Positions 3,901 through 64,000 of a stretch of 64,000 bases of DNA are shown here, in pieces; position 1 is the stretch's first letter, and the number at the start of each line of letters is the position of its first letter. The stretch spans positions 5,123,909 through 5,187,908 of the forward strand of contig CM074804.1 in NCBI GenBank assembly GCA_037447605.1, given 5' to 3'. The DNA is from Zygnema circumcarinatum SAG 698-1b (taxonomy: Eukaryota > Plantae > Zygnematophyceae). Position numbers and translations under genes: made by a program. The notes below the pieces were generated by a model. It saw only the letters and a program-made list of their open reading frames with translations. It searched no databases and had not been told where the DNA came from.

Positions 3901-5899
3901 ATGGCTGAGCCAAGCTGCCCAGCCATGCCAAAACAACAGCAAAACTCGTCAAGTTCTGCATGTACTTACGCCCAAGCTGTTTCTGGCCCTCGCCATATGG
4001 GATAGTCACAGAGAACAGAAGAACGTGAAAACGGAGACAATTAGGGCTGCTTAATGTTACCTCTTCCCGAACAGCATGCAGGCTGTTAGGATGATGAATG
4101 ACTATGACGTGATCACGGCCATTACTCCTGTTCCAAAGTTCCTGCTGTTGCAAAAAATCCACCAGCTTGTACTGCTTGCAGCAATGCCATGCAACCACAA
4201 TTCCCAAATACAATTTACGCTGACGTACAAACTGAAGAGAATCAGAAAAACAGCACATGAGAACTACTTTCATTTATTAGGATAAAGATTCAGCAGCATG
4301 GCAGACAGCCAAGCCAGCCTAAGAAGAAATAAGGTGACTTGCATTATCTAGCCTTCCTTGATGAGCGTTCACTGACTGACCATTTTCTTGACTGAAACCC
4401 ATTCAGCTTCAGCTATTCATTCCATTACTCTCATAGCAAACTGAAAACCACTATTTCTTCAAGAAGCTGGCATTCAACTCATCTTAACCAACTTTGAAAA
4501 AAAAAAAGTGAATAGAATTCTTGAGAAACGTCCATGGGCCCGAAACCTTTTCTCGTAGGTGAGGAATTTCTCTCGTATACATTATTGCAACAAAAATACC
4601 TGTTCTCCTAATTGATAAATCTTTATATTCAAGGACGAGCAGTTTGACAACTGACGTCGCCAAAATCTGCATACTTAATTGCTCGAGGTTTTACAGTGAC
4701 GCCATTCAACATGTCCACATCTATATCTTATGTCTGCCCATAAACTGCTTCTGTAGTCTCACGTTCAACAAACCTACTGCATCATGAGGACTATCAACTG
4801 CGATGGTCAGGTTCAGAATGGAGTAAGGTGTACTTTGGATCAAAAGGTGGCTAATTACCTGTAGTTCTCTGTTGCGGTCGACCATTTCCAATGTGCGATT
4901 TGAGATTCTGCTCATCTCATTGGTATAGCGATTATAAGCAATGGATGCAAAAAAAGGCACCCATATTAAATCAGCCTCATACGGGTCAAGTACTCTAACT
5001 ACGCTACAGGGCCACATCCGATCCTTCATGTTGGAAGTAAGGAGGTCAACTGTCAGCCAGAATTCTGGACTGTGCTGCTGGTACATGCCACCTCTGTATC
5101 GTGGAATGTCAGAGATGTTCTTCGGCAAACGATGCATGTAGTCGTAGTGGAGGAGGCCGAAGTTAAACTCTCCTTCAAGTTCATACATGTAAATGCGAAG
5201 AATTGCATGTCTAGGGTCACACGAGTCTGTCCCGTTGGACCCAAAACGACCCGTATTGAACTCCTCTTCATCTAACTCCAGAAGCATATTGCCTTTTTTC
5301 TTCTTCCGTCGAAGGGAAGGACCTTTTGCCCCATTTTCCGGATTTCCACCGGCAACCGATAGCGTACTAGACCCTCTCCCTAACCAAGAACCAAAGCTTC
5401 CTAAAATGCCGCGTCCACCTGCGGCCTTCATTGCCTGCGCTTGAGTTTCGCTTGAGCCCCTTGACACATCGGATTTCTGGGAAACATTTGTAGGAGAGGC
5501 ATCTGCAAGCAGGTTAACAGCACCACCATCTGCGGAATTAATCGAACCACCCGCTACAAGAGCTCTTGGTCCTGCAAATCGGCGGGAGGTTGAACCGCCA
5601 TTTGGAAACAAGTCTTCTTTCACCGAAAACTGCGAGTCAGTTTTAAGTGGCCTCGGATGCGCTAAGGTGACAACGGCTACAATTGCCAGAAATGAGAGAA
5701 GAGAAACTGTGTAAAGCTGTGTTTTTGAACTCTGTTTCAGGTGAGGATGCTGAAAACCCGGAGAGCCGTGGCGCTTCTCCCCGGCTAACAAACTGCTTTC
5801 TTTGCTCAAGCGGACAGGGCCTGCCCGCCTTTGCCCCTTCATCCCTGCTGCCGCCAGCACAAGCGCCCGCAGGGGAGACAACCCTAAGAGTGTCCGCAT
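953..5899 (-). CDS. Exostosin-family GT47 glycosyltransferase, ARAD-like (putative arabinosyltransferase), 6 exons
   Basis: Exons 5899-4859, 4171-4061, 3914-3735, 3052-2975, 2375-2203, 1598-953, all GT-AG and phase-compatible. N-terminal TM helix ([14 protein letters not shown]). Motifs [103 protein letters not shown]. Start could instead be the Met of MKGQRR. Confidence 0.92.
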
Positions 5900-23827: not shown

Positions 23828-24202
23828 TAGGGATGGCTTAATTACGACTATATAATCTATATTATATTATATAACTGTGACGACTAAATAACGGCTGTTA
23901 TATAATACTTTACAACGCCTTTACAACATGTAAGGTCGTACGGTCGTACGACTGTACGGTATTATGCGGTGAAGACAGAGTGAACCAGACGGACGCATTT
24001 CGCAACGCCAACGCCAAAACGACCTAATTTTGGTATGGTACGACCGTACGACCTTACGAGTACGGTCGTACGGTCGTTAATTGTTCAAAACGAGTGGGTA
24101 TAATATATGTAATAAAGTGTTTTACTTTGTACTATATTACTACTTTTAAACCCGTTGTAAAGTATATAATATAGTCGGACTTTATAACGCGGGCCATCCC
24201 TA
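23828..24202 (-). mobile_element. hAT-family MITE, copy 2 (375 bp), inverted relative to copy 1
   Basis: Same TIRs. Perfect 8-bp TSD CACTGGAC (23820-23827, 24203-24210). Body is the near-identical reverse complement of 23036-23400. Confidence 0.92.
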
Positions 24203-25295
24203 CACTGGACATTGCACGGCTAGACAGACCTTAATGCGACAAACGGAGATGGAGTGAAATTGCTTTGATCTCACGATGGCGATGCCACCAAAGGTACATG
24301 GACAGAAACAAGATGAAGAACCACGAGGACTGTCACAAGGGACCTAAGGATGAAAGAAAAAGACCATGAGCTGAGGTCTGCGTCTAGGCTCAACAACGCG
24401 GCTGTAGAACCAGCTTTTAACCTATGCAGCAATTAAAAAAATGCAAATTACGTGTTCCACACGGAGTTTGAACTGTCGCCTACAAGCGCCTTAAAGGTTG
24501 GAATCGACTAAGTCATGGTGGCGTCTGCGACGGCCCTTGCATGCTTGCCCCGCCCCGCCCTGCGGCCCCCGTGTAGCGTAACGGGGCGGCGTTCGACGGA
24601 TTTGCGTCTGTTCGATTGTACTTGACGTATGCATCTTCCGTGATCAACGGAATTCAGAAGCTGCCAACGGAGATTGAGAGACGGCGGCGCCATGCGTTGG
24701 CGGCCCACGGAACGGCACACCATCCAGCAAGGCACACTCGGAAGCGCCGCAAGATGCCGCCGATTATCATCGGTTGACCTATCCGAAGGCTCCACGTAGT
24801 CAGTCAGGCCTCTCAGTGGGCAGTGGGCCAATCAGGGACTGTCACTGCTAGGACTCAATATCTATTGTCAGTGTTAAGTAGATGGGATGTCAGTGATGCT
24901 GTTTTGTCTTTTAGTGCTGGGCTTAGTATTTGTATTTGCTGTGTGGTTTGTTGTCTTGTTCTTCTTTCTTCTTTTTTCCTTGCTCTTCAGTTACAGCAAC
25001 AGATGCTAAGTAAGAGTAAGAGAGAGAGAGAGAGTTCCATGCCATAGATAGTGAGAGAGAGAGAGAGAGAAAGAGTCTTCTTGCTGATCGCATTTAGACG
25101 TCCCATTCAGCCCAGCTAGACAAAGATTTCAGTGAGAGGACAATTTCATTGTAATGACATTCCCCAGCCAACCGCTGGCTGGGGTGAGTTTCCAAAATGC
25201 AACCTTTATCTAAGTTGAGCACTGTTTTCCCTTTGCTGTCACTATGCAAAGCTGCCATCTTGTCCTAATCTGCCCTACGCTTATTCCAATGACCG

Positions 25296-28200
25296 ATGAT
25301 AACTAGAAGCCTGGCTAAGAGACTGGCCAAGGAGAGGATAGGGGAAGAGAGCCCCCAAGGAAGGGCTCTTCGCGCATCGAGTCCAGCCGCCGGTGGGAAC
25401 ATCTTCAGGATCCCTACGTCTTCCGCTGCGCGTACCTCTGAATCCCCCGGATCCTGGCTCTATGCTGCAGGCAGACCCACAGAACCAACCCAACCCTTCA
25501 TTAGTTTCAGCACGGACGCGCGAGTGGCCGTACAGCACCTGCAGCTAGCTCAGCAGTCTTTGTTTAACCCCACTTATCTTGGTATCAGAGCTGAAGGTTT
25601 TGCAGATCCACGTACCTCGATACGTGAGGCTGCCGATCCTGTGACCCGTGTCACAGCCGCCATGGATGAAGAGCTGCAGCAAGAGGGACAAGCAGATCTT
25701 CATGAGTATTCAGAGGAAGACTTGGCACCTCAAGAAGAAGAAGAACAGGCGATCGGAAATCCGAGGACGGATTCAGACTCAGAGGAAGAGGCAGTCAGAG
25801 AGCGAGACTGAAAATGGGCATCACCGAAGAGAACCCTTATCCCGATTAAACACCTTGAAGCGGTCGAGTGATTGAAGAGGCTGGTGGCGACTCCGTCTAG
25901 GCGGCGATAGCCACAAACTCATTTGGCGGTATACGCAGCGCATGATCAAACTGCGGCTTGCGGTCAATATCCGCGACGCCCGTGCCGTGAAGAGAGAGAA
26001 TTACCGTTGAACACAGGGTCCCCGACTGCGAAGCAGAACCCACGGGATCACCGGTCGGATAACTACTTTGCACGGGGAGTCCTTGAAACGCTGCGGCTGG
26101 CAGCATGATTCTGCAGCCGAGCGAGGAATCATCGAGAGGAGCACCCTCACCTCCGGCTTCGACTTACCCATCCGGCAGCCCCAGGCGAGCGGCTTCGGGG
26201 GCAAGGGCAGGACGATCGCAAGGACCCTCCAGCTTTCGCACCAACCTGCAGAGAAGCACACGAGTCAGATCTGAGTTTCCCAGCAAGATGGAAGAGATGA
26301 TGACAAAACTGATAGCCTTGATTCCTGAAAAGAGTGAGGTGAGGGATACCACGGGCATCATCACTAGAGGCTTCACCGGCAAGCAGGAAGATGCAGAGTC
26401 TTGGCTGAGACACCTTGTGAGGAGAAGCGGTATAGCGGAACTGAGGAGGACGATGGATCAAAAGTGGCCCTTATGGGCAATTTGGAAGGAGAGGCCGTCA
26501 GTAGGCTGTCCCGAAGCTGGCACAAGGCGGGATATGCGTCGCCACCACGACAGGGACACATTCAAGCAAGCTTCGGACAACGGCCCGGATTTGAGATCCG
26601 ATCCAGCACATCTTTGGACCGACTTCGTACATAGAATGCCTGATGATGAGAGAATTTTGTTTGAATTCATGGCGCTTTGTCGCGCATAGCAAATCTGATC
26701 GAGAACTTACTTACAAGTTTTCAGTGCTCGATGGTTCAGCAAGGCCATCGGCGAGAAGGATCTCCACCTGGATCGTGAGCTGCGCGACAACCCACCAGCA
26801 GATGCCCAGGCCTTGTTATAGAAAGGGCAGAGCGAATTCAGAAGGATCAAGAGAGAGGCAACCGACATGTACGACCACATTACATGAACGCTACAGATCC
26901 ACGACAAGATCGACTCTACCAGCAGTTCCTGAAGACACAGAATCAACAGTTGTTCGATCCCTACGCTACATCTACTCGGAACAAGCCTTCCTTCTCCGGC
27001 GTCACTGCTCAGGACATCCGGACAGCCCCTGTGGTGCAGCCTCTGGCTATAGCCAACACAACCAAGCCCCTTCCCCTTTCCCCATACCTCAAGGATCCGC
27101 CCATCCCATTGAGCGGGCGGGTGAATCCTCACATACCGTGATGTTTCTCGGCCCAGATATCGGCTCCTTATTCGACGACGCCCGGCGAGTAGAGAGAAGT
27201 CGCTGTGGCCGACCGCTACCGCCGGATGACAGAGGCGGGGTTCCAGAGGGCGCCTCGTCTCTGCCCAGGCCTAACTCACAATCCACCGAGGCTGGGTGCG
27301 GACCATGGACACACCTTGCCCGAATCGCGGCGGGACATGATGCGCGTGTGTGCATGCGAGGAACTCTCAAGTGAGGAAGGCCCGAAAAGGGAAAGAGGCA
27401 GCGGCAGGGAACTCACCTGCCGAGATCACTTTCATGGACATGCTCCCGGCTTCTCCCCCACCCTCAAGAACACCGGCTCCCTTTCGCCCGCCGCCACCTC
27501 CTTCACCCGCTTACACCATCCTGCAACGACCACCTATCCATCTGCACCCCATGGACTCCCCTTCCAGCCGAGCGTGTTGGTCTTTGAGCCGATCTTCTTT
27601 ACCCGATCACGCCTTTGCCGAGGTTGCAGGCATTTCAACCCGGCTTTTATAGATCCCCATGCCGAAGGCGGCTCAAGCCGGATCGCGAGATTGCAGCGCC
27701 CTTGAGCTCCCTGTCAACGGCGATCCTCATTCTCATCCTCTGCCATTCCTCCCTGCCAATGTCACCGGCGCCAGTTCCTCGGGCACGGCTCCATCGGTCG
27801 CCACCCCTGTCCGAAGAACTTCAGTCATCCCTCCCTCCACGGGTCCTCCCTTGGGATCCCTGCCTGAGGAGGACATTGAAGATCTCAATGAAGAGGAGCC
27901 GCCAGCGGCGCAACCAGAGCCGACGCCACCGGCGACCGAAGAGATGCACGTCAACCCTCCCCACCGCCCTCGGGCAGCCCGTTTCTACCCCCAAGCAGCC
28001 GATCGTCGACCACCCCCCCCGACAGACGGCCTATCCCTGATTGAACGCATGGTTCATCAACTCATGGGTGACAAGGCTAAGATCGGCATTACCTTGTCAC
28101 AGTTGATGCAGCTCGTACCAGGTGCTGCCGCCGTAGTTCGAAAGCTGGCCGACAGCGCAGAGGCCACCCTGCGGCCGCCCGCAGCTCCTATGACATCTCC

Positions 28201-31200
28201 TCCGGACGTCCCCTCGCCGGCCGATATCCACCACATGGCTACGGCGCCTCTGCCGGACCCAGGCCGCTCCCCTCGCCATCCTCCTCGACAGATTCAGATC
28301 CTCCCTCTCATCCCAACACCCAATGTGCGGATCATTGTCAATGTATGGCTCAACGGTCATCCCAGCAAAGCCATGATCGACACAGGAGCCATGCGCACAG
28401 TTCTGTCCAAGCCTGTGATGAAGGCTGCAGGGGTTAAGTTGGACAAGACACTTGAGCCAATTCCCGGAGTATGTGGGGGTTGAAGGAAGCTTACATGAAA
28501 GTTAGGCGGCGTAAGTGGTCATGATCTTGTGGCAGGATAAGACCCACGGTGAATCTGATCATCCTGACGTGAACACTATTCTATCCTTGCTGGGCTCAGA
28601 TTGGCTCATCGCGATGGGAGCACAAATCGACTTTGCTACATGTCAACTGCACAAATCTGCTGGCGGGACAGCCTGCTCCTTTCCCATGAGTCCTTACCAC
28701 CTCCGCCTTCCCCAAGCGCCACGCCCGCGGCCTTGAGGAGTCTCTACTGGGAGATCACCATATACCGTGTCGGTCGGCTGACCCCCATTCTTCTCATGGT
28801 CGGCCAATTCATTACCAACTGACCCAGAGACTCCCCCCCTCTGCTCCTCCAGTCCGGCTCTCGATTGCGCCAGCGGACAGCTGACTGCGCCGGTGATACG
28901 CACCGGCTTTCCCCACATGAGACCATCATCGCGGCGAGAGTTGGTTGGAAATGTAGGGCAGATGTATTAGGCCCGCAGCCTTTAATTCATCAAGCATTCT
29001 CAACTACGCCGTTGCCGCCACCGAATCACCTAGTTTCGCGACGGCCATTCACTCTATTACTCCGCAAGACTCACTTGATTGAGCACGCGTCGATACGGGG
29101 GACGCCTTTCCGTGATGATACGACTCCCTGCAAGCTTCTCACGCCCTTACCTGGCGAATGTCCGAACAACGGTCGGCGAAACGTGGTATCAGTTGATGGG
29201 AATTTGGAGAAGGGCGTGGGCGGCCTGGCGGATTCTTTAAGCGGATGCTGGCACACTCCAGCCGTAGGGGCTACCGAGAAATTTGAATGCAACGCGAAAG
29301 TGGGATCTACACATTACGGATGTGGACCTGATTCTCCACGGCGTCTCCCACATTGACCCGGTGGTTCGGCCCAGCAGCGTCACGAGAAGTATCCTTACGG
29401 CGGTCCCCCTTGGCGGGGCCGATCATTTGCAAAGAGCCGGGGGCTTACAGCAGCCCGCAGCGCTTTTGTGCAATGGGCGGTACTTCCATTAGGGCTCAGA
29501 ATTCCAGCCCGAGACTCACCCGGCGCTGGCGAAAGCGAGGTGTTGGCCCACAATGGGTAACTCTGGGCCTTACGTGGATGATGCTTGATCCGCGGCAAAA
29601 GGGCCCGGTCACTCCCACTGCGGCACAGTGACCAAGTCCACGCAGCGGCTCATCGGTCGCGGCGTCACGAAGATTGCACCCAAGAAGTGCAAATGGGGCC
29701 ACCAGGAGATCACTCATCTCGGGCACCGCCTCGGCATCAATGGCCTGAAACCATCACTCGATAAGATTGAAGCGATTGCCCTCATGCCGATTCCACAGAC
29801 CCTCACTCAGCTCAAGTCCTTCTTGGGGCTCACCTCATTCTATCGCCGGTTCATCAAGGGATATGCCCTTATCGCGCGTCCCCTCCATGCCTTGGAGAAG
29901 CACGAGGTCAGTCTGAATGGAGCCCGGCGAGGATTTGGCCTTCCGCGGCGCTCAAGAGTGCCACTCGCCGGGCTCCTTGCACGCATCAGTCCGACCCCAA
30001 CCTTCCCACCATTATTGACGCCGACTGGAGTTAGACAGGCTTTGGGGCAGTGGCCAGCCAAGCATTCTCAGATGGGGAACACCCGGTCAGTTTTGCAAGC
30101 AAGGTCTGTTCAGAAACCGAGACCAAGTATAGCCCTACTGAGGGAGAGGCCGCGGCTATCCTCTGGGCACTCGAGAAGTTCAAGCTCTTCACGGCCTACC
30201 AGCCCGTTATCATCCGGACTGACCACATGCCCCTCACCTGGCTGCACATCATGGCTACCCTACGCCCTAAGTTTGCACGATGGGTGATGAAGTTGGAGGT
30301 ACAATGTACTCAAAAGTCCTCACGTCGGCGTAGTCGCGAAATGCGTGGCCTCGGTCGCGATCCCGACCCGCCTCCTGCGCCCGCGATCGCAGGCCATCCA
30401 CAGGCGCCCATCCCTCCACCCACCCTCTTGAATCCTGAGCATATTCCCATTGAGATTTTTATTGCCGCTCAAGCCCTGCATGATGTCCTCTTGGCAGTGG
30501 GCTGATGCGACATTCGACCACCGCCACACCCTCCATGTTGGGAGGACCACAGGCTTCACCCACGGCCACCCCCATGCGGATCCGTGGGAAATCCTCATGG
30601 ATGACGATGGCGACGCTCCCTTACTTCCTCCCCATTTCCCCAGCTCCAATGACGTCCATTCGGACTCCTCCCTGCTGTGCTACGTTATGACCCGCCGCAG
30701 CGCCCCCTTTATCCACACGGACACCGAGGGCTTCGGCTGCTCCGCGCTCTCCCGGAACTACCGGTTGATGATGGCGGGGCCAGTCATACCTCCCTGGCCC
30801 TACTTTCCTTTCCCAATGAGCATGGAGATTCTGGATGTCGCCCACGATTCTCAGCCCGGCGGATTCCACCTCGGCCAGAAGAAGATGGTGGCGCTGCTAC
30901 AGGAACGCTACTATTGGCCCGGCCTCCATGGCGCGGTGAGCCGCTACATTGAAACCTGCACCCGCTGCCAACGCGGCAAGCGCTCTGCTCCCCCCGACCG
31001 CCAACCCCTTGAGATGGGTGAGATCCCAATACGCGGCGTCGCCGAAGACTGGAACATCGACACCTTTTCTATTCCCCAGCTCGGCACCCCCTCTGGCTAC
31101 ATTCGGGTCTTCCTAGCCGTGGACAGATACACCAAGTGGGTAGAAGTTCATACGACAGAGTCTAAGCATTCCATCCACTCTGCTCGCCTCCTGACGGCCA

Positions 31201-31308
31201 TCATTCACCGCCACTCTATACCCTACTCTGTCCACTCTGACAACGGCACCGAATACAAGGGGGCATTCGCCAAGCTCATGCAGGACTTCCGCATCATTCA
31301 CCACACCT
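25296..31308 (+). pseudogene. gag-pol of gypsy unit 1 (fragmented by frameshifts or sequence errors; truncated at the gap)
   Basis: ORF fragments 25296-25811, 27659-28483 (protease), 29628-30287 (RT end), 30050-30505 (RNase H), 30450-31308 (integrase). Confidence 0.8.
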
Positions 31309-31789
31309 NNNNNNNNNNGGGCCAATCAGGGACTGTCACTGCTAGGACTCAATATCTATTGTCAGTGTTAAGTAGATGGGATGTCAGTGATGCTGTTTTG
31401 TCTTTTAGTGCTGGGCTTAGTATTTGTATTTGCTGTGTGGTTTGTTGTCTTGTTCTTCTTTCTTCTTTTTTCCTTGCTCTTCAGTTACAGCAACAGATGC
31501 TAAGTAAGAGTAAGAGAGAGAGAGAGAGTTCCATGCCATAGATAGTGAGAGAGAGAGAGAGAGAAAGAGTCTTCTTGCTGATCGCATTTAGACGTCCCAT
31601 TCAGCCCAGCTAGACAAAGATTTCAGTGAGAGGACAATTTCATTGTAATGACATTCCCCAGCCAACCGCTGGCTGGGGTGAGTTTCCAAAATGCAACCTT
31701 TATCTAAGTTGAGCACTGTTTTCCCTTTGCTGTCACTATGCAAAGCTGCCATCTTGTCCTAATCTGCCCTACGCTTATTCCAATGACCG

Positions 31790-34700
31790 ATGATAACTAG
31801 AAGCCTAGCTAAGAGACTGGCCAAGGAGAGGATAGGGGAAGAGAGCCCCCAAGGAAGGGCTCTTCGCGCATCGAGTCCAGCCGCCGGTGGGAACATCTTC
31901 AGGATCCCTACGTCTTCCGCTGCGCGTACCTCTGAATCCCCCGGATCCTGGCTCTATGCTGCAGGCAGACCCACAGAACCAACCCAACCCTTCATTAGTT
32001 TCAGCACGGACGCGCGTGTGGCCGTACAGCACCTGCAGCTAGCTCAGCAGTCTTTGTTTAACCCCACTTATCTTGGTATCAGAGCTGAAGGTTTTGCAGA
32101 TCCACGTACCTTGATACGTGAGGCTGCCGATCCTGTGACCCGTGTCACAGCCGCCATGGATGAAGAGCTGCAGCAAGAGGGACAAGCAGATCTTCATCAG
32201 TATTCAGAGGAAGACTTGGCACCTCAAGAAGAAGAAGAACAGGCGATCGGAAATCCGAGGACGGATTCAGACTCAGAGGAAGAGGCAGTCAGAGAGCGAC
32301 TGAAAATGGGCATCACCGAAGAGAACCCTTATCGATCACGGCTTACCTTGAGCGAATCGAGTCGATTGAAGAGCTGCGGCGCGACGCTCGCGTCCCCAAG
32401 CGTGATGGCCTTTAAACTCGGTAGCGGTATACGCGCCCGCATGATCAAAGCTTTGCGGCTTGCCCGATCCCTATTTGTCCGCGACGCCGTGCCGTGAAGA
32501 GAAGGGCCCGTTGAACACGAGGTCCCCCGCGGCCCCGCGAAGCAGAACCAGCGGGATCTCCGGTCCGGATAACTCTTGCACCGAGGAGTCCTTGGCTGCT
32601 ATACGGTACCTGTGATTCTGACGAGCAAGGGAATCATCGAAGACACCCTACGCCTCCGGCTTTCGACTTACCCATCCGGCCCAGGCGGCCGGGGGCAAAG
32701 AGGCGGGGGCGATGCAGGACCCTCGACTTTTAGCACCAACACCGCGCGAAGCACCGCAGTGATTTGAGTTTCAGCCGAGATGGAAGAGATGATGACCAAA
32801 TTGATAGCCTTGATTCACGAAAAGAGTGAGGTGAGGGATACCACGGGCATCATCACTAGAGCTTCACGGCAAGCGAGGAAGATCGCGAGAAGCATGTTTG
32901 AGACACCACCTTGAGGGGAGAAGGCGGTATGGCGAACTTTGAAGGAGGACGATGGATGGTGGCCACTTGGAGCGGAAGGAGGCCGTGTTGGAAATTTTGT
33001 CCAGCTGGCACAAAGGCGGATGTAAATTAAGCCACCACGACAGGGACACATTCAAGCAAGCTTCCGGTTCTTATTTGGATTCCGGATCCGATCAATGTTT
33101 GGACCCGACATTGCGTAGAATCTTTACCGATGATGAGGCGTTTTGAGATTCGAAACGTGGCAGCGTAAGCGAAATCTGATCGAGAACTTGCACGAGTTTT
33201 CGAGAATTATCGATTAGTTCACTTAAGGCCATGGCCGAGAAGGATCTCCACCTGGATCGTGAGCTGCGAGACAACCCACGGCGAGATGCCGGGCATTGTT
33301 AGGCGAGTGAGGCGGTCGGAAAGGATCAAGAGAGGCAACCGGCGTATGCGACCCGCATTACATGAGCGCTCTGAGATCAGCGGCAGGGGATCGGCTCTAC
33401 CAGCCCGATTCTTGAAGGCCAGCGAGAATCAGCGGTTGTTCGATCCTGCCTTCCATCTACTGGAACAAGCCTTCCTTCTCCGGCGTCCTTTGCTTTCCGG
33501 GGCGTCAGGGCCGGCCACGTAGTGCGGCCTGCAGCGTAGCCCGTATGACGAGAAGCCGCTTCCCTTTCCCATTACCCTGCGTGATCAAGCCCGTCCCGTT
33601 GAGCGGCCGGTGAATCACATACCGAGATGTTTCGTCCGGGATATCGGGCTCCTTGTGGTCAGATGCTTGCCTTGCAGAAGAGAAGGCTGCCGGCGGGGGC
33701 GATCTGGCAGGTCGGATAGCCCGGCCGAGGGGAGTTCGGTGCATGCGGCTGTGGCCTAACTCACAATCCGCGGCTGCGTTGCGGACCATGGACCTGCACC
33801 TTCTGCCAGATCACGGGACATGATGCCCGTGTGTGCATGCGGAGACTCTCAAGTGAGAAGGCCCGAAAAGGGAAAGAGGCAGCGGCAGGGAACTCACCTG
33901 CCGAGATCACTTTCATGGACATGCTCGAGCTGCTCCCCACCATCGAACACACCCTTCCCTTTACCGCCCGCCCCGCCCTCCTTGCCCGCTTACACCATCT
34001 GCGACCACCTATCTATGCACTTTGCACCCATGGACTCCCCTTCCCGCAGCCGAGCGTATTGGGTCGCGAGCGATCCTATTTACCCCGATCACGCCGCGCC
34101 CGATTTTAGCGGCATTTCAACCCGGCTTTATCCCGAGAATCCCCCATCACGCCGAGGCGAGGCTCAAGCCGGATCGCCAGTTACGGCGCGCCCGCCCAGC
34201 GAGGCTCCATCCAGCCAGCGATCCTCATTCTCATCCCTGCTGCCATTCCCTCCCACTTCCAATGTCACGGCGCAGTTCTCGAAGACGCGGCTCCATCGGT
34301 CACGCTACCCCCGTCAGAAGAACTTGATCATCCCACTCCCACTCCACGGGTCCTCCCTTGGGATCCCTGCCCGAGGAGGACATTGAAGATCTCAATGAAG
34401 AGGAACCGACAGCGGCGCAACCAGAGCCGACGCCACCGGCGACCGAAGAGATGCACGTCAACCCTCCCCACCGCCCTCGGGCAGCCCGTTTCTACCCCCA
34501 AGCAGCCGATCGTCGACCACCCCCCCCGACAGACGGCCTATCCCTGATTGAACGCATGGTTCATCAACTCATGGGTGACAAGGCTAAGATCGGCATTACC
34601 TTGTCACAGTTGATGCAGCTCGTACCAGGTGCTGCCGCCGTAGTTCGAAAGCTGGCCGACAGTGCAGAGGCCACCCTGCGGCCGCCCACAGCTCCTATGA

Positions 34701-37000
34701 CATCTCCTCCGGACGTCCCCTCGCCGGCCGATATCCACCACATGGCTACGGCGCCTCCGCCAGACCCAGTCCGCTCCCCTCGCCATCCCCCTCGCCAGAT
34801 TCAGATCCTCCCTCTCATCCCAACGCCCAACGTGCGGATCATTGTCAATGTATGGCTCAACGGTCATCCCAGCAAAGCCATGATCGACACATGAGCCATG
34901 CGCACAGTTCTGTCCAAGCCTGTGATGAAGGCTGCAGGGGTTAAGTTGGACAAGACACTTGAGCCCGTTCCCCGATATGTGGGGGTTGAAGGGAGCTTAC
35001 ATGAAGGATTGGGCAGCGCCCAAGTGGTCATCAGTCTTGGCGAGATGGGAGCCACGGTGAATGCGGTCATCACGGCCGCTGAACACTATTCTATCCTGCT
35101 GGGCTCAGATTGGCTCATCGCGATGGGAGCACAAATCGACTTTGCTACATGTCAACTGCACTTATCTGCTGGCGGGACAGCCTGCTCCTTTCCCATCATC
35201 CTCGAGTCCCTTACCACCTCCGCCTTCCCCAAGCGCCACGCCACGGCGCAGGTCTCCTACCCGGAGATCACCATGTACCATTCGGTCGGCAGCCCCCATT
35301 CTTCTTATGGATCGGCCAATTCTGATACCGATGACGAGACTCCCCCTCCTGCTCCTCCGNNNNNNNNNNCTCAAAGTCACTCACCGTCCCGGCCGTAGTC
35401 ACGGAAATGCTGATGGCCTCAGTCGCAATCCCTCGGCTCCCCTCCTCTGCCACGATCCGGCCGTCCCTGAGCCCATCCCTCCACCCACCCTCTTGAATCC
35501 TGAGCATCTTCCCATTGAGATTTTTATTGCCGCTCAAGCCCTGCATGATGTCCTCTTCGCAGATGGGCTGATCGACATTCCGGCCACCGCCACCACCCTC
35601 CATCGCTGGGAGGACCCTGACTTCACCCACGGCCACCCCCATGCGGATCCGTGGGAAATCCTCATGGATGACGATGGCGACGCTCCCTTACTTCCTCCCC
35701 ATTTCCCGGCTCGATAGCGTCCATTGGACCCCACTCCACAGCGTACTTTCACGTTATGACCGCCGCAGCTGCCCCGCTTTATCACTGGACACGAAGGGCT
35801 GGTACGCTCCGCCGCTCTCGAACTTCGGTTGATGATGGCGGACGAATCTTGTACCTCCCCTGGCCTTCTGATTTCCTTTCCCAATGAGCGCATGGAGATT
35901 ACGGATGTAAGCCCACGATTCTCGCGACCCGGCGGATTCCACCTCGGACAGAAGAAGATGGTGGCGCTGCTACAGGAATGCTACTATTGGCCCGGCCTCC
36001 ATGGCCTTGATGAGCGCTACATTGAAACACTTTTAGCGTGGCGCTCTGTGCTCCCCAGGCCGCCAACCCCGCGAGATGGGTGCCAGATCCCAGTATGGCG
36101 TCGCCCGGAAACTCAGAACATCGACACTTGCACCTACATTCCCGGCTTCGGCACCCCCTCGGCTACATTCAGGTCTTCCTAGCGCGTGGGCGGGGCCACA
36201 CCAAGTGGTAGAAGTTCATACGGCCAGTCTAAGCATTCCATCAAAGCTCTGCGCCGCCTCTACGGCCATCATTCACCGCCCATCTATACCACTACTCACA
36301 TCCCACTTCGTGGCACGAATACAAGGGGGCATTGCCCAGCTTCATGCGGGACTTCGCATCATTACGCCCACACCTCGGCCCCCTCTTTCCCCGTGAGAAT
36401 GGCACAGCGAGGCGATACCATTGAGCGGTCCAGGATCTCTTTACGTCGCGTCGCTGCTGGTATTTGGGCCGGGGCTGGCGGGCGAGGTCATCCCTCCCAC
36501 GGGTCTTCGCGTATAACACCTCAGTCGATCCACACTCATCCACGGGCTTCTCTCCCTCACGAGAAACCCTGCATGGTAGGTAAGCCCAGCATTCCCCTTG
36601 ACCTCCTCTCTGTGAGCCCCTCTTCTGATGTAGCGCCTCCCGGTCGGGTCGCCCGACTCCGACTCCGGCCTAAGCTTCCAAACCCTAGATTCATGGCCTC
36701 CACGTCCCACCTCGACCCGGCGCCCCGCAGACGGCAATGCGGCTTTGGGGAGGCGCCCGGCGTCTTTGCTCTCCGCCAATCAGGTGGCGCCATCGGCTCA
36801 TTTGGCTCGGGGAATCTTGCCAAACCGACTCAGCGGGCTTTCCGTGGTTGGGCCCTTTTATTTATTCGGTCCGTGGAGATCCCGATTTGGGCGTCATTTG
36901 GAAGGCCCCGGCTCCCCAGTAAAACGCCAGCGGCTGGCGTTCACGCTGGATCGGCGATGCGTCTGCACCGCGTCGGCTGATCCCCTCCCGATGGTGGCGT
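31790..37000 (+). pseudogene. gag-pol of gypsy unit 2 (RT/RNase H missing at the 35360-35369 gap)
   Basis: Near-identical gag start (MITRSLAKRLAKE). Protease 34358-35398. The gap joins to HRPGRSHGNADGLSR. Integrase fragments from 35829 onward. Confidence 0.75.
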
Positions 37001-38726
37001 TACGACCCGGCGTAGCGGCCTCCCTCCGTACCCCCACGCCGCCAGCGACTCCTCATTGGTCGTTCCTAATTCCGCCACTTTTGCCGCCCAGCATTCGCTG
37101 TAGGCGCGGCTTTTCGACTTCGGCTTTGTCTTCTCCCTCCTCCACCTCGATCCGCCCGATACTCCCGTTTCGAGATATGCAGCGGAAACTTCTCCGAGGC
37201 GACGCCCGGCTCTGGCCCAGCGGTCCACCGTCCGTGTCACTGGCAGTCCACTTCCCGCGCCGCTGTCTCTTCTTCCTTGTCGCGATGCGGCTATTTTCCC
37301 AGGGCATGTGCTACAGTGTAAGCGTATAGCGAAGCCCGGCGTTCAACGGATTTCGCGTCTGTTGATTATGCGGCGTATCTCGTCTTCGATGTCAGCGGAT
37401 CAAGCGGAATGAAGGCGCCAGCGGAGGGTGAAGGCGAAGCCGCTCTGCGTTGTAGCCCGCGAACGACACCATCCGGCCAAGGCACACTTTCGGAGCGCCC
37501 GCCAAGATGCGCCCGATTATCATCGGTTGACCTATCCGAAGGCTCAGCGTAGTCGGTCCGGGGCTTTTCGGTGGAAGCGATTAGATTGTCGGGGAAGCAT
37601 CACTTGCTAGGACTCAATATCTATTGTCAGTGTTAAGTAGATGGGATGTCAGTGATGCTGTTTTTGTCTTTTAGTGCTGGGCTTAGTATTTGTATTTGCT
37701 GTGTGGTTTGTTGTCTTGTTCTTCTTTCTTCTTTTTTCCTTGCTCTTCAGTTACAGCAACAGAGAGAGAGATGCTAAGTAAGAGTAAGAGAGAGAGAGAG
37801 AGTTCCATGCCATAGATAGAGAGAGAGAGAGAGAGAGAAAGAGTCTTCTTGCTGATCGCATTTAGACGTCCCATTCAGCCCAGCTAGACAAAGATTTCAG
37901 TGAGAAGACAATTTCATTGTAATGACATTCCCCAGCCAACCGCTGGCTGGGGTGAGTTTCCAAAATGCAACCTTTATCTAAGTTGAGCACTGTTTTCCCT
38001 TTGCTGTCACTATGCAAAGCTGCCATCTTGTCCTAATCTGCCCTACGCTTATTCCAATGACCGATGATAACTAGAAGCCTAGCTAAGAGACTGGCCAAGG
38101 AGAGGATAGGGGAAGAAAGCCCCCAAGGAAGGGCTCTTCGCGCATCGAGTCCAGCCGCCGGTGGGAACATCTTCAGGATCCCTACGTCTTCCGCTGCGCG
38201 TACCTCTGAATCCCCCGGATCCTGGCTCTATGCTGCAGGCAGACCCACAGAGCCAACCCAACCCTTCATTAGTTTCAGCACGGACGCGCGTGTGGCCGTA
38301 CAGCACCTGCAGCTAGCTCAGCAGTCTTTGTTTAACCCCACTTATCTTGTGCTACACCCGCCCCCCTCCACGCGACGAGCCGGACCGGGCCGGAGAGCCA
38401 AATCGGTCGGCCAAATCTTCAATCGGGCCGGCCCGGCCCGGGCCCCGCCCGGCATGCCTCCACGTGGCGACCTCCCATAGGAGGTAATTGCATATGTCCT
38501 GCCACGTGGCGATCACGAACAGGCTGTTCCATGCCGCACGGAGCCGCGATTAGGGTTCGACGGGGCCGGGCCGGGGGCGGGGCCGGCGGGCGGGCGGGCG
38601 GGCGGGCGGGATCCTGTCCTGTGACTCCTGTCCTCGCCATCAGCGGCCTCTTGCAGCACCTCCCTCCCTCCCCCCCTCCCTACCGGAGAAAGAGAGGAAC
38701 GGGACGCCTCGGCGGAGCAGGGGGGC

Positions 38727-55520: not shown

Positions 55521-58500
55521 TCGACTCTGGCGCTTCCACGCACATGTGTGGCGACAAGCGAATGTTCTCTACGCTGGACACCTTGGAGAGGACCAGATCT
55601 GTTCACTCGGCAACCGGAGAGGGAGTGACAGTTACAAAAGGAGGAGTAGTAAAGATGATCCTCGGAGACGGCTCTGTCATCTACGAAGAAGAAAGAGAAG
55701 AGCGGTTGTGCATCGGTGACGTACTTCACACCCCTGACCTGAAACAGAACTTCATGTCTGTTAGTCAAGTATGTAAGAGGGGGTACGAAGTCACCTTTAA
55801 GGAGAAGTCTTGCGTAGCTACTCACTTGGAGTCGGGGAAGCGGCTGTTTGAGGGGTACGAGAAGGGAGGCCTATATTACCTTCATTATAGAGAGAAGAAG
55901 ATGAGGGTGTGGGATGGCCGTGAATCAGGGTGCAGAAATCTCTGCATCGTAGACTTGGACATCTAAACCATAGGGGACTGCAACAGCTTGCTGCAAGGGG
56001 GCTGGTCCGCGGGTTAGACATTGACATAGTTGAGAAAGAGCTAGGCTTTTGCAAAGAGTGTGTAGAGGGGAAGGCGCATCGGAGACCCTTTTCGAGGAGT
56101 GGAGAGGAATCATTTCACGCGCAGGAGAAACTGGAATTGGTACATACCGATTTGTGTGGCCCCGTGACACCGGCAACGAGCGGAGGAGCTCGCTACTTCA
56201 TCACCTTCCTCGACGATTTTTTCGAGGAAAATTTGGGTGAAAATTCTCAAGTACAAGTCAGAAGCTTTCGGAGCTTTCAGAGATTGGCAGACTCAGATGG
56301 AGCGAGAGAGCGGTCAGAAACTGAAGACGCTGCGCTCGGACAACGGAGGGGAATTCAAGTCGAAGGAGTTCGGCGGGTACTTGAAGGCTCGCGGAATAAG
56401 GCATGAATTTTCTGCTCCTTACTCCCCTCAAAGTAATGGAGCTGCTGAGAGGGTCAATAGGACGCTGGGGGACATGGCACGGACCATGCTGATAGATTCC
56501 CCCTTCCCGGCATCTTTTTGGGGAAAGGCGGTGATGACCGCAACTTACCTTAGAAATAGATGCCCATCTTCTGTGCTTAAGGATCAGGTTCCTGAAGAGG
56601 TGTGGAGTGGGAGGAAACCCACGGTGTCCCACCTGAAGACCTTTGAGCGCTACCGCTGGTCGACAAAGGGGCCAAGGCGCAAGGTAAGAGAAAGCCTGAA
56701 TCGAAAGCCAGGAAGGGTACCTTTCTGGCTACAACATGGATGTACGCGACTCTACCGGGAGGTGTGGGAATCCTCGAAAGCAAACGGCGCAGAGTCGAGA
56801 GACGCTACGCTGGACGGCAGAAGGGGGCGTGACTCGGCTAGGTGAGACCCGCACCCCAAAGGCAGGTTTGGAAATTGTGTACGAGGATGTGGAGAGACAA
56901 ATGGTAGCATGGACGCCTCGTGTCCCACCAGAGGAGATCAGCACTGGTGAGCTGAGAGCCGAGTCGCGGAAGCAACGCCAACGGAGGCGCCGTGGGAGAG
57001 TTGAATCCCGAGGAGATGCTAGCTGGGAGCCGCAGAATCATTTTAATTGAGACGGCACCACTACACACTCACCTGTCCGACGAGGAGAACTCGGCCAAAA
57101 CTGTACTTTGCATGGGCAAGAGTCTGAGGATTTGGAGACGGCTGAGAAAGAGGCTATGTTGTCGAGCATGCCTCCCGGGTTTGTCCCGGGATTTTCTTCA
57201 ACACGAGGAGCCGGAGAGCGCAAGGACCTCGGAGGAGCACCCGTGTGGTGAGGAGGCCTGATCACTACAGGCCTTCGCAGACTAACCTAGTACAGGAAAG
57301 AGTGCCTACAGACTCAGCGGACCTCGCGGGAGCTGCCCACTGTTTTATGATCACCGAACCGCAAACCTTTGAGGAGGCGCACGACGGGGTCGATGGAGAG
57401 AAGTGGCGAGCAGCAATCGACAGCGAGTGGGACAGTTTGCTGGAGAACGGCACGTGGCGACTTGAGGAGCTGCCGAGGGGAAGGAGGGCCATTGGATGCA
57501 AGTGGGTGTTCAAGGTGAAGCGAAAGGCGGACGGGAGCGTCGACCGTTACAAAGCGCGTCTGGTGGCGAAGGGCTTCAACCAGGCGTACGGAATCGACTA
57601 CACTGAGACCTTCGCCCCGCAGAAGTTCAACTCCTCCGCGCCCCAATACTTCCATTGCAAATGTCGCAGGGATGCAATCGCGACATCAACCTCTATATCA
57701 AGACCGCGTTTTTGTACGGAGATCTCGCTGAGGAGATCTACATGGTACAGCCCGAAGGGAAAGTTGTCCCGGGGCAGGAGCATCTCGTTTGTCGTCTTGT
57801 GAAAAGTCTGTACGGACTGAAACAGGCGCCCAGGATTTGGTACGAGAAAATTGATGACCTCTTGAGGAGTAACGGATTTGCGCGATTCGAGACGGATCAT
57901 TCCGTCTACCGACAAGGGGAAGAGGCGGATCTCATGTACGTTGGGATCTACGTGGACGACCTCATAATGGTGAGCCTCTCATTGGAGAGAATCAATGATT
58001 TGAAACAGCTTTTGGAAGCTAACTTCAAAATGTCGGATCTAGGGGAGGCACAGTATCTCCTAGGAATGCAGTTGAAGAGGGGGCAGGACGGTAGCTTATT
58101 TCTTTGTCAGAAGAAGTACGCCGCAGATATACTTGCCAGGTTCAAAATGGAGGAGTGCCGTCCTTGTTCGAGTCCGATGGAGATCGGAATGCGATTGTCG
58201 AGAGATATGATGCCGGCGACAGATGCGGAGGTACAGAGAATGTACGGAGTGCCGTACAGATCGGCAATCGGGAGTTTAATGTATCTGATGATAGGTACTC
58301 GTCCTGACTTGGCAAAAGCTGTGAGCTCAGCAAGTCGGTTCATGGAGAATCGGTCACGAACATTGGGAGGCGTGGAGAAGCGGATCTTGGTCGTGAAAGG
58401 ACCTTGGATTCTGACCTCGAGGAGGTTGAGAGGGCCGGCCCAAGTGATGGATCATACGACTTCCAGTTAGGGAGGTGGCGTGGACTAGCGATCCGCGATC

Positions 58501-62500: not shown

Positions 62501-64000
62501 TGTCGGGAGGTGGCTCCACACCTGTTCGCATCTGCTGCTCCCCTTGGAATTCTCGTCGACTTGAAGGTCACGGCTTGACATAACCTTCTGCGTGGAAGGG
62601 TTCCAGACCCTGTAGGTCAAGCTGTCGGCGTTGTAGCCGAGGAAGTAGCCGAACTCGCTTCTCGGGCTAAACTTTGTATCTAACTTGACCTTTGGAACCG
62701 CTATCCAGCACTTCGAGCCCCAGACTCTTAAGTGCTGAACTGTAGGCTTATTGCCACTCCACATTTCCTCGGGTACTTTCTTCTCATCTTTCAGGGCACT
62801 GGAAGGACACCTGTTCCGGATGTAAGCTGCCGTGAGTATTGCTTCTCCCCAAAAATCGAGGGTGAAGGGGGACTCACTCAGCATGGCTCTTGCCATGTCA
62901 CCGAGGGTTCGGTTCACCCTCTCAGCCGCGCCGTTGCTTTGCGGGCTGTAGGGAGCGGTGAACTCGTGTCGAATCCCGAGTGACTTGAGGTGAGCAGAGA
63001 ATTGGAGGGACCTGTATTCACCTCCATTGTCCGTTCGGATCCTCTGCACCTTCTCTCCGGTCTGCCTCTCTACCTCTAACTGCCAGGTCCGAAAGGTCTC
63101 AAACGCCTCACTTTTAAACTTCAGCAGTACTACCCATATCTTCCTGGAATAATCATCAAGGAAGGTGATGAAATACCTTGAACCGCCCTTTGACTCGGGA
63201 GTGATCGGTCCGCATAGATCGCTGTGGACCAACTCCAGCAGCTTGGACGCGCGATGCTTCTCCGCNNNNNNNNNNAGAAGGAAGCCAGTCTAGGAAGTAG
63301 AGTCCATCCCTCTGTGTTCCTCTGCAAAGAACCTTCCTGGTTTTTCTGTGCACTATCTTACAGGACTCCTCCCGGAAGACCCCCTCGTATCCGCCCTTGC
63401 AAATCTGACTAACCGAGAAGAAGTTATTCTTCAGGGTTGGGGTATGAAGCACACTACCAATTCTGAGTTTGGAAGCTGTCCCTTCTCCTGTGGGGGACAG
63501 CTGGACGAACCCACCATGGGTGACGGAGACCTCGTCTCCGGTTGCCGAAGTCACGGCTCGTGACTGGTCAAGCAACGTCATCTCTGTAAAGAGAGACTTA
63601 TCACCACACATATGTTTAGAGGCACCAGAGTCTATGAGCCACGGTGAAAGATTATCTTTATTCATAAAGATTTGATTTACAAATTCCGCTGGCTTGGCAT
63701 CACTTGCCATGTTACTCGCCTCTATCTGAGCCGACCCTGACCCTGGACAGTTCCGGGCCAGATGACCCGGCTTCTGGCACTGAAAACATAACATCTCCTT
63801 GCCTTTCTTCTTGTCACCGTGAGGGACACCGCTGGGTCGTCCTCCACCCTGGGCTGCCTTCTTGGTACGACAATCGGCTTCGAGATGTCCCTTCCGCTTG
63901 CAGTAGTTGCAGAATGTTCCCGGTGCGCCGCCTCTCTTCACGGGGTTTCGTTGTGCGATCACCATGACGTCTTCGGGAGACGACTTCTTTGCTCCCTTTA
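59529..64000 (-). mobile_element. Ty1/copia retrotransposon B (continues off the right edge)
   Basis: 3' LTR 59529-60456 with TG...CA ends, same PPT as element A. RT-RNase H ORF 60472-62064, integrase 62483-63232, gag/protease 63156-63965 (two CCHC knuckles, WLIDSGASKHMCG). Confidence 0.95.

What the first reader, a model, noticed from the sequence alone, without database searches (positions are those of the whole stretch)
24568..38360. Ty3/gypsy element with circularly permuted (split) LTR ends: candidate integration of a 2-LTR circle at an internal palindrome
Seen: the left border is CCCG|TGTAGCG. The LTR ends before both PBSs are ...CTTATCT|TGGTATCAG, with no CA. After the purine-rich PPT remnant (...AGGGCA) the last LTR begins TGTGCTACA-G-TGTA(A)GCG (37307-37324). 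The right border is ...CTTATCT|TGTGCTACA|CCCG (38341-38360). The 9-mer that starts U3 is missing at the left end and appended after U5 at the right end, giving A1-ORFs-B1-A2-B2 with A about 1 kb and B 9 bp. Established: linear cDNA runs from PPT to PBS, DDE integrases need terminal CA, and split direct repeats are known from tyrosine-recombinase retroelements (PAT/TOC1/Ngaro). Inference: the cDNA is end-joined into a 2-LTR circle (junction ATCT|TGTG), then opened at the GCTACA-G-TGTAGC palindrome, which provides CA on both strands, and inserted with a 4-bp TSD. I know of no such route described for a DDE-integrase gypsy.
Basis: partly seen in the sequence, partly recalled or inferred. Interest (0 to 1): 0.9.

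Follow-up and report, generated by a model that had tools for sequence, protein, structure and literature searches.

The report
Gypsy retrotransposon with permuted integrase ends
A young, very abundant gypsy-type retrotransposon of a freshwater alga keeps one of its two integrase cutting sites in the "wrong" place, a layout that seems to need its DNA ends to be joined before insertion, but only one noisy, gap-ridden copy could be examined here.

Summary
The left border reads CCCG|TGTAGCG (24568-24578). Both LTR-PBS junctions read CTTATCT|TGGTATCAGAGC. The stretch 37302-37324 reads GGGCA|TGTGCTACA|G|TGTAAGCG, and the right border reads CTTATCT|TGTGCTACA|CCCG (38341-38360).

The element is a PR-RT-RH-IN gypsy with a DDE integrase. 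There is no room for a tyrosine recombinase and no polypurine tract. Its outer ends form a perfect 6-bp inverted repeat (TGTAGC...GCTACA) with a 4-bp duplication.

Short-read contigs from two studies confirm the right border without a difference. A contig from a third sample breaks exactly after GCTACA, which is probably an empty site.

Weak points:
- The internal 9-mer lies in a raw-read-like patch that no accurate contig matches.
- Each gap hides more than 1 kb, so the LTR-int-LTR-int-LTR tandem may be a scaffolding product.
- No second copy could be fetched, although the family looks very abundant, perhaps hundreds to thousands of copies.

If the layout is typical of the family, the U5 end must be joined to the U3 start before integrase cuts. 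That could happen through a 2-LTR circle or an end-to-end template switch. Neither was tested.

First readers of this scan noted the same layout at five other places in this genome. None of those notes has been checked.

The parts
24568..24571 (+). Left copy of the 4-bp target-site duplication, CCCG
   Evidence: the same four letters stand at 38357-38360
24572..25579 (+). LTR 1 (A1, 1008 nt). It starts TGTAGCG and ends CTTATCT, with no terminal CA.
   Evidence: Loose-end consensus of accurate contigs (CACTCGGAAGCGCCG) matches its 5' part exactly.
25580..25591 (+). Primer binding site TGGTATCAGAGC (12 nt). It is complementary to the 3' end of plant-type initiator tRNA-Met (own knowledge).
25592..31308 (+). 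Internal region, contig A: gag leader, protease, RT (YVDD at 29571), RNase H, integrase zinc finger and the first part of the DDE core. It has many frame breaks between about 25825 and 30000. The contig ends inside the integrase core.
31309..31318 (.). Assembly gap. The sides are not continuous: integrase core on the left, LTR position about 255 on the right. At least about 1.2 kb is missing if the tandem is real.
31319..32073 (+). LTR 2, lacking its first ~254 nt. It is 99-100% identical to LTR 1 and also ends CTTATCT.
32074..32085 (+). Second PBS, TGGTATCAGAGC
32086..35359 (+). Internal region, contig B (gag to protease). The stretch 32317-34330 is a raw-read-like noisy patch: 58-91 matches (mostly 66-80) and 4-31 gap columns per 100 alignment columns against contig A.
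35360..35369 (.). Assembly gap. The sides are not continuous: the equivalent of 28850 on the left, of 30309 on the right. About 1.46 kb (the RT) is missing.
35370..37306 (+). Internal region, contig C: end of RNase H, integrase and the 3' tail. It is noisy (82% identity to contig A, with 100-102 gap columns in about 1050), mostly bare of accurate contigs, and has no purine run of 7 or more in its last 400 nt.
37307..37315 (+). B1: TGTGCTACA, the U5-side integrase end, stored between the internal region and U3. It lies inside the unverified noisy patch.
37316..37316 (+). Spacer x (G) at the centre of the palindrome GCTACA-G-TGTA(A)GC
37317..38347 (+). LTR 3 (A2). Its first ~290 nt are a noisy version of LTR 1. 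From about 37600 it is 98% identical to LTR 2. It ends CTTATCT.
38348..38356 (+). B2: TGTGCTACA, appended after U5. Its last six letters are the exact inverted repeat of the element's first six.
   Evidence: Verified by X1 and X3 contigs with 0 differences; the X6 contig breaks at 38356|38357.
38357..38360 (+). Right copy of the 4-bp target-site duplication, CCCG

Best explanation
This is a recent insertion of a very abundant Ty3/gypsy family of a streptophyte alga, probably polymorphic between samples. The two sequences that its DDE integrase cuts are TGTAGC... on the U3 side and ...GCTACA on the U5 side. Both are stored side by side, as a circle-junction-like palindrome (GCTACA-G-TGTAGC), between the internal region and U3.

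Reverse transcription primed by tRNA-iMet should give LTRs of the form B-x-A, running TGTGCTACA-G-TGTAGCG...CTTATCT. The right end of that cDNA has no CA.

The integrated ends seen here are A at the left and A-B at the right. They can arise only after the U5 end is joined to the B at the start of U3. That joint could form by ligation into a 2-LTR circle, or by the plus strand switching template from the right end to the left end. Integrase then cuts after CA on both strands of the palindrome and inserts the DNA with a 4-bp duplication.

Shown: the layout in this copy, the integrase type, the right border, and the inverted-repeat ends. Inferred: that the layout is typical of the family, the joining step, and the cut.
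For: - The junctions read as described, and the 9-mer occurs only at the two predicted places.
- The element's first six and last six letters are a perfect inverted repeat ending in CA, and they are flanked by CCCG on both sides.
- Both clean LTR-PBS junctions lack the 9-mer and lack CA.
- Pfam finds protease, RT_RNaseH, Integrase_H2C2 and rve. tblastn with distant kin gives the order PR-RT-RH-IN.
- The sequence upstream of B1 is unlike the LTR, so B1 is not the tail of a decayed tandem LTR.
- The right border is verified without a difference in runs from two studies. A contig from a third sample breaks exactly after GCTACA, so B2 belongs to the insert and not to the host.
- The unique X1 contig begins only at 38330. 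The 31-letter words that end inside B2 are therefore shared with other loci. This is a weak inference.
- The insertion is young: the clean parts of the LTRs are 98-100% alike. Two matching 9-10-nt changes arising after insertion are therefore unlikely.
- There is precedent for integrase cutting a junction palindrome: PFV (PMC1180852) and HIV-1 (PMC1905944, PMC4372172).
Against: - Only one copy was read.
- B1 and x lie in 36865-37439, where no accurate contig matches. The local error is about 18%.
- Linear DNA is the established integration precursor of retroviruses, and the circle-junction model was abandoned (PMC11054761).
- The 4-bp duplication lies in C/G-rich flanks, so it could be chance.
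- One X3 contig shows an LTR end CTTATCTT followed by neither the PBS nor B (table 5c).
- No circle, junction read or enzyme activity was observed.
Confidence: 0.5

Rival explanations
1. This is an ordinary gypsy family with identical TG...CA LTRs. The odd inner junctions are private to this locus, or they are products of a poorly polished, scaffolded assembly: raw-read patches, a stray contig B, and repeats polished onto the wrong copy.
For: - There are large raw-read-like patches: 58-91 matches (mostly 66-80) per 100 columns in 32317-34330, and 82% identity in 35370-36375.
- No accurate contig lies on 36865-37439.
- Two gaps hide more than 1 kb each. Contigs A and C overlap by 1 kb in element coordinates, so a single 8.7-kb element plus a misplaced contig B is possible.
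- No second copy was examined.
Against: - Noise does not write an exact 9-mer, identical to the verified right-end 9-mer, one base in front of the LTR start.
- The two LTR-PBS junctions lie in clean sequence that is 99-100% identical between contigs, and both lack the 9-mer.
- Polishing a repeat tends towards the family majority, which would restore an ordinary end rather than delete it.
- The young age of the insertion argues against two matching indels.
Confidence: 0.25
2. The layout is real and typical of the family, but it is made without joining the ends. Plus-strand synthesis would start right after x, with the palindrome region standing in for the missing polypurine tract. The right-end 9-mer would come from an unknown minus-strand primer or primer remnant. 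The linear cDNA would then already be A...A-B.
For: - There is no purine run of 7 or more in the 400 nt before B1, so plus-strand priming must be unusual anyway.
- The left end would then be an ordinary TG end.
Against: - The 9-mer TGTGCTACA does not match the PBS or tRNA sequence TGGTATCAG.
- No template for it lies next to U5 in the RNA.
- The palindrome region does not fold better than shuffled sequence (-5.6 kcal/mol, z = +1.06).
Confidence: 0.13
3. This is a tyrosine-recombinase retroelement of the PAT/Ngaro/DIRS kind, which integrates from a circle by site-specific recombination.
For: The order of the split direct repeats, A1-B1-A2-B2, is that of PAT and Ngaro elements (PMC4157794).
Against: - Pfam finds Integrase_H2C2 and rve, and the domain order is PR-RT-RH-IN.
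- Only about 930 nt lie between the integrase core and B1, which is no room for a recombinase gene.
- A tRNA-type PBS, TG/CA inverted-repeat ends and a 4-bp duplication are all present, and these elements lack them.
Confidence: 0.02

Closest known systems
Cleavage of the palindromic LTR-LTR junction of 2-LTR circles by retroviral integrase (PFV: PMC1180852; HIV-1: PMC1905944, PMC4372172)
   Same: A DDE integrase cuts after CA on both strands of a palindrome made of the two abutted viral ends, giving integration-ready ends from a circle.
   Different: In those viruses the palindrome is the junction itself, cutting merely restores the normal linear ends, and the route is optional and debated. 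Here the palindrome sits 9-10 bp inside U3, away from the predicted joint. A cut there would permute the ends, and the route would be obligatory.
Panganiban and Temin 1984: SNV with a circle junction placed inside the genome (as recounted in PMC11054761)
   Same: An internal copy of the abutted LTR ends is proposed to serve as the site of integration.
   Different: That was an engineered virus, and its interpretation was later abandoned in favour of linear precursors. Here the internal junction-like site is natural and sits in a very abundant family.
Split direct repeats of PAT, Toc, Kangaroo, Ngaro and VIPER retroelements (PMC4157794)
   Same: The repeats have the order A1-ORFs-B1-A2-B2, which implies a circular or end-joined intermediate.
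   Different: Those elements carry a tyrosine recombinase, have no tRNA PBS, make no target duplication, and have far longer B repeats. This one has a DDE integrase, a tRNA-iMet PBS, TG...CA ends, a 4-bp duplication and a B of 9 bp.
Copy-out-paste-in bacterial IS of the IS3/IS911 type (own knowledge, not tested here)
   Same: A DDE enzyme of the same superfamily uses a circle in which the two ends are abutted with a short spacer.
   Different: These are DNA transposons of bacteria, with no reverse transcription and no LTRs.
Canonical Ty3/gypsy LTR retrotransposons
   Same: They share the domain order, tRNA-iMet PBS, about 1-kb LTRs, outer TG...CA inverted repeats and a short target duplication.
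   Different: In canonical elements the two LTRs are identical from TG to CA, a polypurine tract abuts U3, and the PBS follows a CA end. None of these three holds for this copy.

Membership tests
Ty3/gypsy (Metaviridae) LTR retrotransposon | pol domain order protease - RT - RNase H - integrase | tested here: met
   Pfam finds protease, RT_RNaseH, Integrase_H2C2 and rve. YVDD stands at 29571. tblastn with distant kin gives PR 34832-35173, RT/RH 29571-30298 and IN 30780-31307.
Ty3/gypsy (Metaviridae) LTR retrotransposon | Long terminal direct repeats flanked by a short target-site duplication | tested here: met
   The LTRs are 1008 and 1031 nt. CCCG stands on both sides. The X6 contig breaks at 38356|38357.
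Ty3/gypsy (Metaviridae) LTR retrotransposon | tRNA-complementary PBS directly after the 5' LTR | tested here: met
   TGGTATCAGAGC at 25580 and 32074. Its match to tRNA-iMet rests on my own knowledge, since there is no tRNA gene in the window.
Ty3/gypsy (Metaviridae) LTR retrotransposon | Each LTR runs from TG to CA and the two LTRs are identical at both ends | tested here: not met
   The outer ends are TGTAGC...GCTACA. The 5' and middle LTRs end CTTATCT without the 9-mer, and the 3' LTR is preceded by it.
Ty3/gypsy (Metaviridae) LTR retrotransposon | Polypurine tract abutting the 3' LTR | tested here: inconclusive
   There is no purine run of 7 or more in 36900-37306, but that stretch is unverified noisy sequence.
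PAT/Ngaro/DIRS tyrosine-recombinase retroelements | Tyrosine recombinase gene in place of a DDE integrase | tested here: not met
   A DDE integrase is present. No recombinase domain was found in any piece searched. Only about 930 nt lie between the integrase core and B1.
PAT/Ngaro/DIRS tyrosine-recombinase retroelements | Split direct repeats A1-B1-A2-B2 | tested here: met
   The order holds, with A about 1 kb and B 9 bp. B1 lies in noisy sequence.
Integration through a 2-LTR circle junction | Existence of the joint CTTATCT|TGTGCTACAG in extrachromosomal DNA, and integrase cleavage of the palindrome | not testable with these tools
   Only chromosomal assemblies and contigs were available. The chromosomal right border carries the joint's letters, which fits the model but does not prove it.
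Family-wide trait (as opposed to one odd copy) | The same four junction types in many independent insertions | not testable with these tools
   Every route to other copies came back empty. There are only weak hints: where the X1 contig starts, and five unchecked first-reader notes from other places in the genome.

The most novel reading that the evidence does not exclude
Several gypsy families of this streptophyte alga have given up the polypurine tract and precise cDNA ends. They would carry a built-in circle-junction-like pair of integrase sites in front of U3, so that integration by a DDE integrase must pass through joined LTR ends (a 2-LTR circle or its equivalent). That would be a natural, obligatory version of a route long rejected for retroviruses, arrived at independently of the split-repeat layout of tyrosine-recombinase retroelements.
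Probability: 0.35. Interest if true: 0.9.

Novelty: new variant of a known kind. Interest (0 to 1): 0.65.

Why it matters
Every studied LTR retrotransposon and retrovirus is thought to integrate a linear cDNA. The ends of that cDNA are set by the tRNA primer and the polypurine tract, and circles are regarded as dead ends.

A highly successful family whose integrated form can only be made from joined ends would show that a DDE integrase can use a circle-junction-like substrate as its normal route, as bacterial IS3-type elements do. It would also give a natural system for the old circle-junction question. It would explain how an element can do without a polypurine tract. And it would affect LTR-finding software, which assumes two identical LTRs.

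Tried and rejected
Routes to other copies that found nothing:
- An exact scan of metagenome contigs for the LTR end found 0 matches.
- An exact look-up of ten window ORFs in the protein collection found none on record.
- Word-indexed protein searches with the integrase piece and with the ORF that runs across the LTR end into B2 found nothing.
- Viral contigs held no relative.
- HMMER against 1.84 billion representatives gave best integrase hits of only 23-40% identity, so no close kin is on record.
- Loci of four distant kin (L001-L004) were satellite-rich or transcript-like. They gave no readable LTR pairs, so I dropped them.

Readings rejected:
- Tyrosine recombinase: a DDE integrase is present and there is no room for a recombinase gene.
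- B1 as the tail of a decayed tandem LTR: the upstream 900 nt align to the LTR no better than shuffled sequence.
- A fold-back chimeric read: the palindrome arms are only 6 nt long.
- A stable hairpin at the palindrome: one search gives z = +1.06.
- B2 as host sequence: the X6 contig matches only from 38357 on.

Rfam and tRNA scans of the window found nothing. I could not read the first 393 letters of the X6 contig, so the empty site is inferred and not seen.
Full report
WHAT IS THERE

- The element starts after CCCG (24568-24571) with TGTAGCG (24572).
- LTR 1 (24572-25579) and the partial LTR 2 (31319-32073) both end CTTATCT. Both are followed at once by TGGTATCAGAGC (25580, 32074). From my own knowledge, that sequence is the complement of the 3' end of plant-type initiator tRNA-Met.
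- In front of LTR 3 the window reads GGGCA-TGTGCTACA-G-TGTAAGCG (37302-37324).
- After LTR 3 it reads CTTATCT-TGTGCTACA-CCCG (38341-38360).
- TGTGCTACA occurs only at these two places in 64 kb (0.37 expected).
- The first six letters of the element (TGTAGC) and its last six (GCTACA) are a perfect inverted repeat ending in CA. The same four letters, CCCG, flank both sides.

The outer ends are therefore those of an ordinary integrase-made insertion. It is the inner ends that are odd. The LTRs next to the PBS lack the last 9 letters, and the 3' LTR has those 9 letters plus one spacer base in front of it.

WHAT KIND OF ELEMENT

- Pfam finds an aspartic protease, RT_RNaseH, the integrase H2C2 zinc finger and the rve DDE core.
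- YVDD stands at 29571.
- tblastn with distant relatives places protease, RT-RNase H and integrase in the gypsy order.
- Only about 930 nt lie between the integrase core and B1, so there is no room for a tyrosine recombinase, and none was detected.
- There is no purine run of 7 or more in the 400 nt before B1.
- The integrase has no close relative among 1.84 billion representative proteins: best 33% identity at E = 6e-24, and at most 40% among the listed hits.

GAPS AND SEQUENCE QUALITY (tested first, as asked)

Neither gap is continuous.
- Gap 31309-31318 joins the middle of the integrase core to position about 255 of an LTR.
- Gap 35360-35369 joins the equivalent of 28850 to the equivalent of 30309, so about 1.46 kb with the RT is missing.
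- In element coordinates contigs A and C overlap by 1 kb. The scaffold therefore fits a true LTR-internal-LTR-internal-LTR tandem, or equally a single 8.7-kb element with a stray contig B placed inside. I cannot tell which.

Large stretches look like unpolished long-read sequence.
- Contig B, 32317-34330, shows 58-91 matches (mostly 66-80) and 4-31 gap columns per 100 alignment columns against contig A.
- Contig C, 35370-36375, is 82% identical to contig A, with 100-102 gap columns in about 1050.
- The first ~290 nt of LTR 3 are an error-laden version of LTR 1, while the rest is 98% identical to LTR 2.

INDEPENDENT READS (Logan contigs of three runs of the same organism and one of a second organism)

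(a) The family looks very abundant. Summed word depth is 30,000-270,000 in the LTR against 25-115 in the right flank. The tool warns that summed depth is not a copy number, so I take this only as a very rough hint of hundreds to thousands of copies.

(b) No contig lies on 36865-37439 at 85% likeness or more. The letters of B1 and the spacer are therefore unverified.

(c) The right border is verified. An X1 contig (280 nt, single-copy depth) lies on 38330-38556, and an X3 contig on 38339-38556. Both show 0 differences and come from two different studies.

(d) An X6 contig of 646 nt, at single-copy depth, matches only from 38357 on. Its preceding 393 letters lie on nothing in the stretch, LTR included. 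The break falls exactly after GCTACA. The simplest reading is an empty site in that sample. That would make the insertion young and polymorphic, and it would show that B2 belongs to the insert. I could not read those 393 letters.

(e) The unique X1 contig starts only at 38330. If B2 were private to this locus, unique 31-letter words would begin about ten letters earlier. This hints that other copies also end in B2. It is a weak inference, because contig ends also depend on how the assembly graph was cleaned.

IS B1 REAL?

At about 18% error, noise cannot write an exact copy of the verified right-end 9-mer one base in front of the LTR start. Nor is B1 the tail of a decayed tandem LTR: the 900 nt upstream align to the LTR no better than shuffled sequence (score 21 against a shuffled maximum of 31). 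I take B1 as real in substance. Its exact letters, and the length of the spacer, are unconfirmed.

HOW IT MOST LIKELY WORKS

Under textbook reverse transcription, U3 starts where plus-strand synthesis starts and U5 ends at the PBS. B2 lies beyond the R/U5 part that the RNA carries, so each new copy can get its right-end 9-mer only from B1.

With plus-strand synthesis starting before B1, both new LTRs would be B-x-A. The cDNA would then run from TGTGCTACAG... to ...CTTATCT. That right end has no CA.

The observed insertion, A...B-x-A-B, is exactly what results if two things happen. First, the right end becomes joined to the left end, giving the joint CTTATCT|TGTGCTACA-G-TGTAGC. Second, integrase cuts after CA on both strands of the palindrome.

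It could also be made by the polymerase switching from the right end to the left end. The shared TG of TGGTATC and TGTGCTA would help such a switch. The integrated sequence cannot tell these two routes apart.

Shown: the layout, the enzyme type, the right border and the inverted-repeat ends. Inferred: the joining, the cut, and that the family as a whole behaves this way.

COMPARISON WITH WHAT IS KNOWN

- Foamy-virus and HIV-1 integrases cut the palindromic junction of 2-LTR circles (PMC1180852, PMC1905944, PMC4372172). There the palindrome is the joint itself, and the route is optional and debated.
- The idea that retroviruses integrate through an internal or circle junction goes back to Panganiban and Temin (1984). 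It was dropped when linear DNA was shown to be the precursor (PMC11054761).
- The order A1-B1-A2-B2 is known as split direct repeats in PAT, Toc, Kangaroo, Ngaro and VIPER elements (PMC4157794). All of those carry a tyrosine recombinase.
- Full-text searches for a DDE-integrase LTR element with this layout found none. That does not prove there is none.

EARLIER NOTES OF THIS SCAN

First readers flagged the same layout (A...B-GA-A-B, A...B-aa-A-B, 'built-in circle junction in place of a PPT') at five other places in this genome. None has been followed up. I treat them as leads, not as support. A follow-up note elsewhere calls the organism a freshwater green alga related to land plants.

VERDICT

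The key internal 9-mer is plausible but lies in bad sequence. The 13.8-kb structure is a scaffold composite. Family-wide validity, which a simple census of the assembly would settle, could not be tested here.

The mechanism follows from logic, not from observation. I put about 0.5 on the joined-ends reading and 0.25 on a private or assembly oddity. The rest goes to other routes.

Noticed in passing
window 23036-23403 and 23825-24202: Two copies of a ~370-380-bp AT-rich element stand in inverted orientation (96% identical). Each is bounded by CTAGGGATGGC.../...GCCATCCCTA-like inverted ends, so it looks like a MITE. The pair lies about 370 bp upstream of the gypsy insertion. Another first-reader note in this genome speaks of an LTR family with 4-bp duplications found only inside a MITE family.
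   Followed up: no
window 56237-58470 (+) and 60472-63965 (-): Two copia-type retroelement remnants (RVT_2, rve, SH3_retrovirus). They are cut by gaps and by the window end, and no LTR pair is detectable.
   Followed up: partly
window 25825-30000, 32317-34330, 35715-37590: Raw-read-like patches, with dense indels and broken frames, lie inside otherwise clean repeat copies. Polishing appears to have failed in repeats, so any fine-scale reading of transposon ends in this assembly needs a check against accurate reads.
   Followed up: partly
window 38348 -> 37691 (run X3, table 5c): One contig (depth 53) joins the LTR end ...CTTATCTT through 14 other letters (CATCCTACTTGCTA) to LTR position 37691. 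In that copy the LTR end is followed by neither the PBS nor the 9-mer. It is unexplained, and may be a rearranged or nested copy.
   Followed up: no
window 37850-38319 (run X11, the second organism): The second organism's run holds a few LTR pieces at depth 2-4. Some are nearly identical (1 difference in 135 nt). This is either carry-over between samples or a family shared by the two organisms.
   Followed up: no
window 4721-5899 (-): A 392-aa ORF has a weak Exostosin/GT47 domain match (E = 3e-7, below Pfam's cut-off). It is probably one exon of a host glycosyltransferase gene.
   Followed up: no
window 38557-38616: A (GGGC)n-like simple repeat stands 200 bp to the right of the insertion. It breaks the short-read contigs of all runs.
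   Followed up: no
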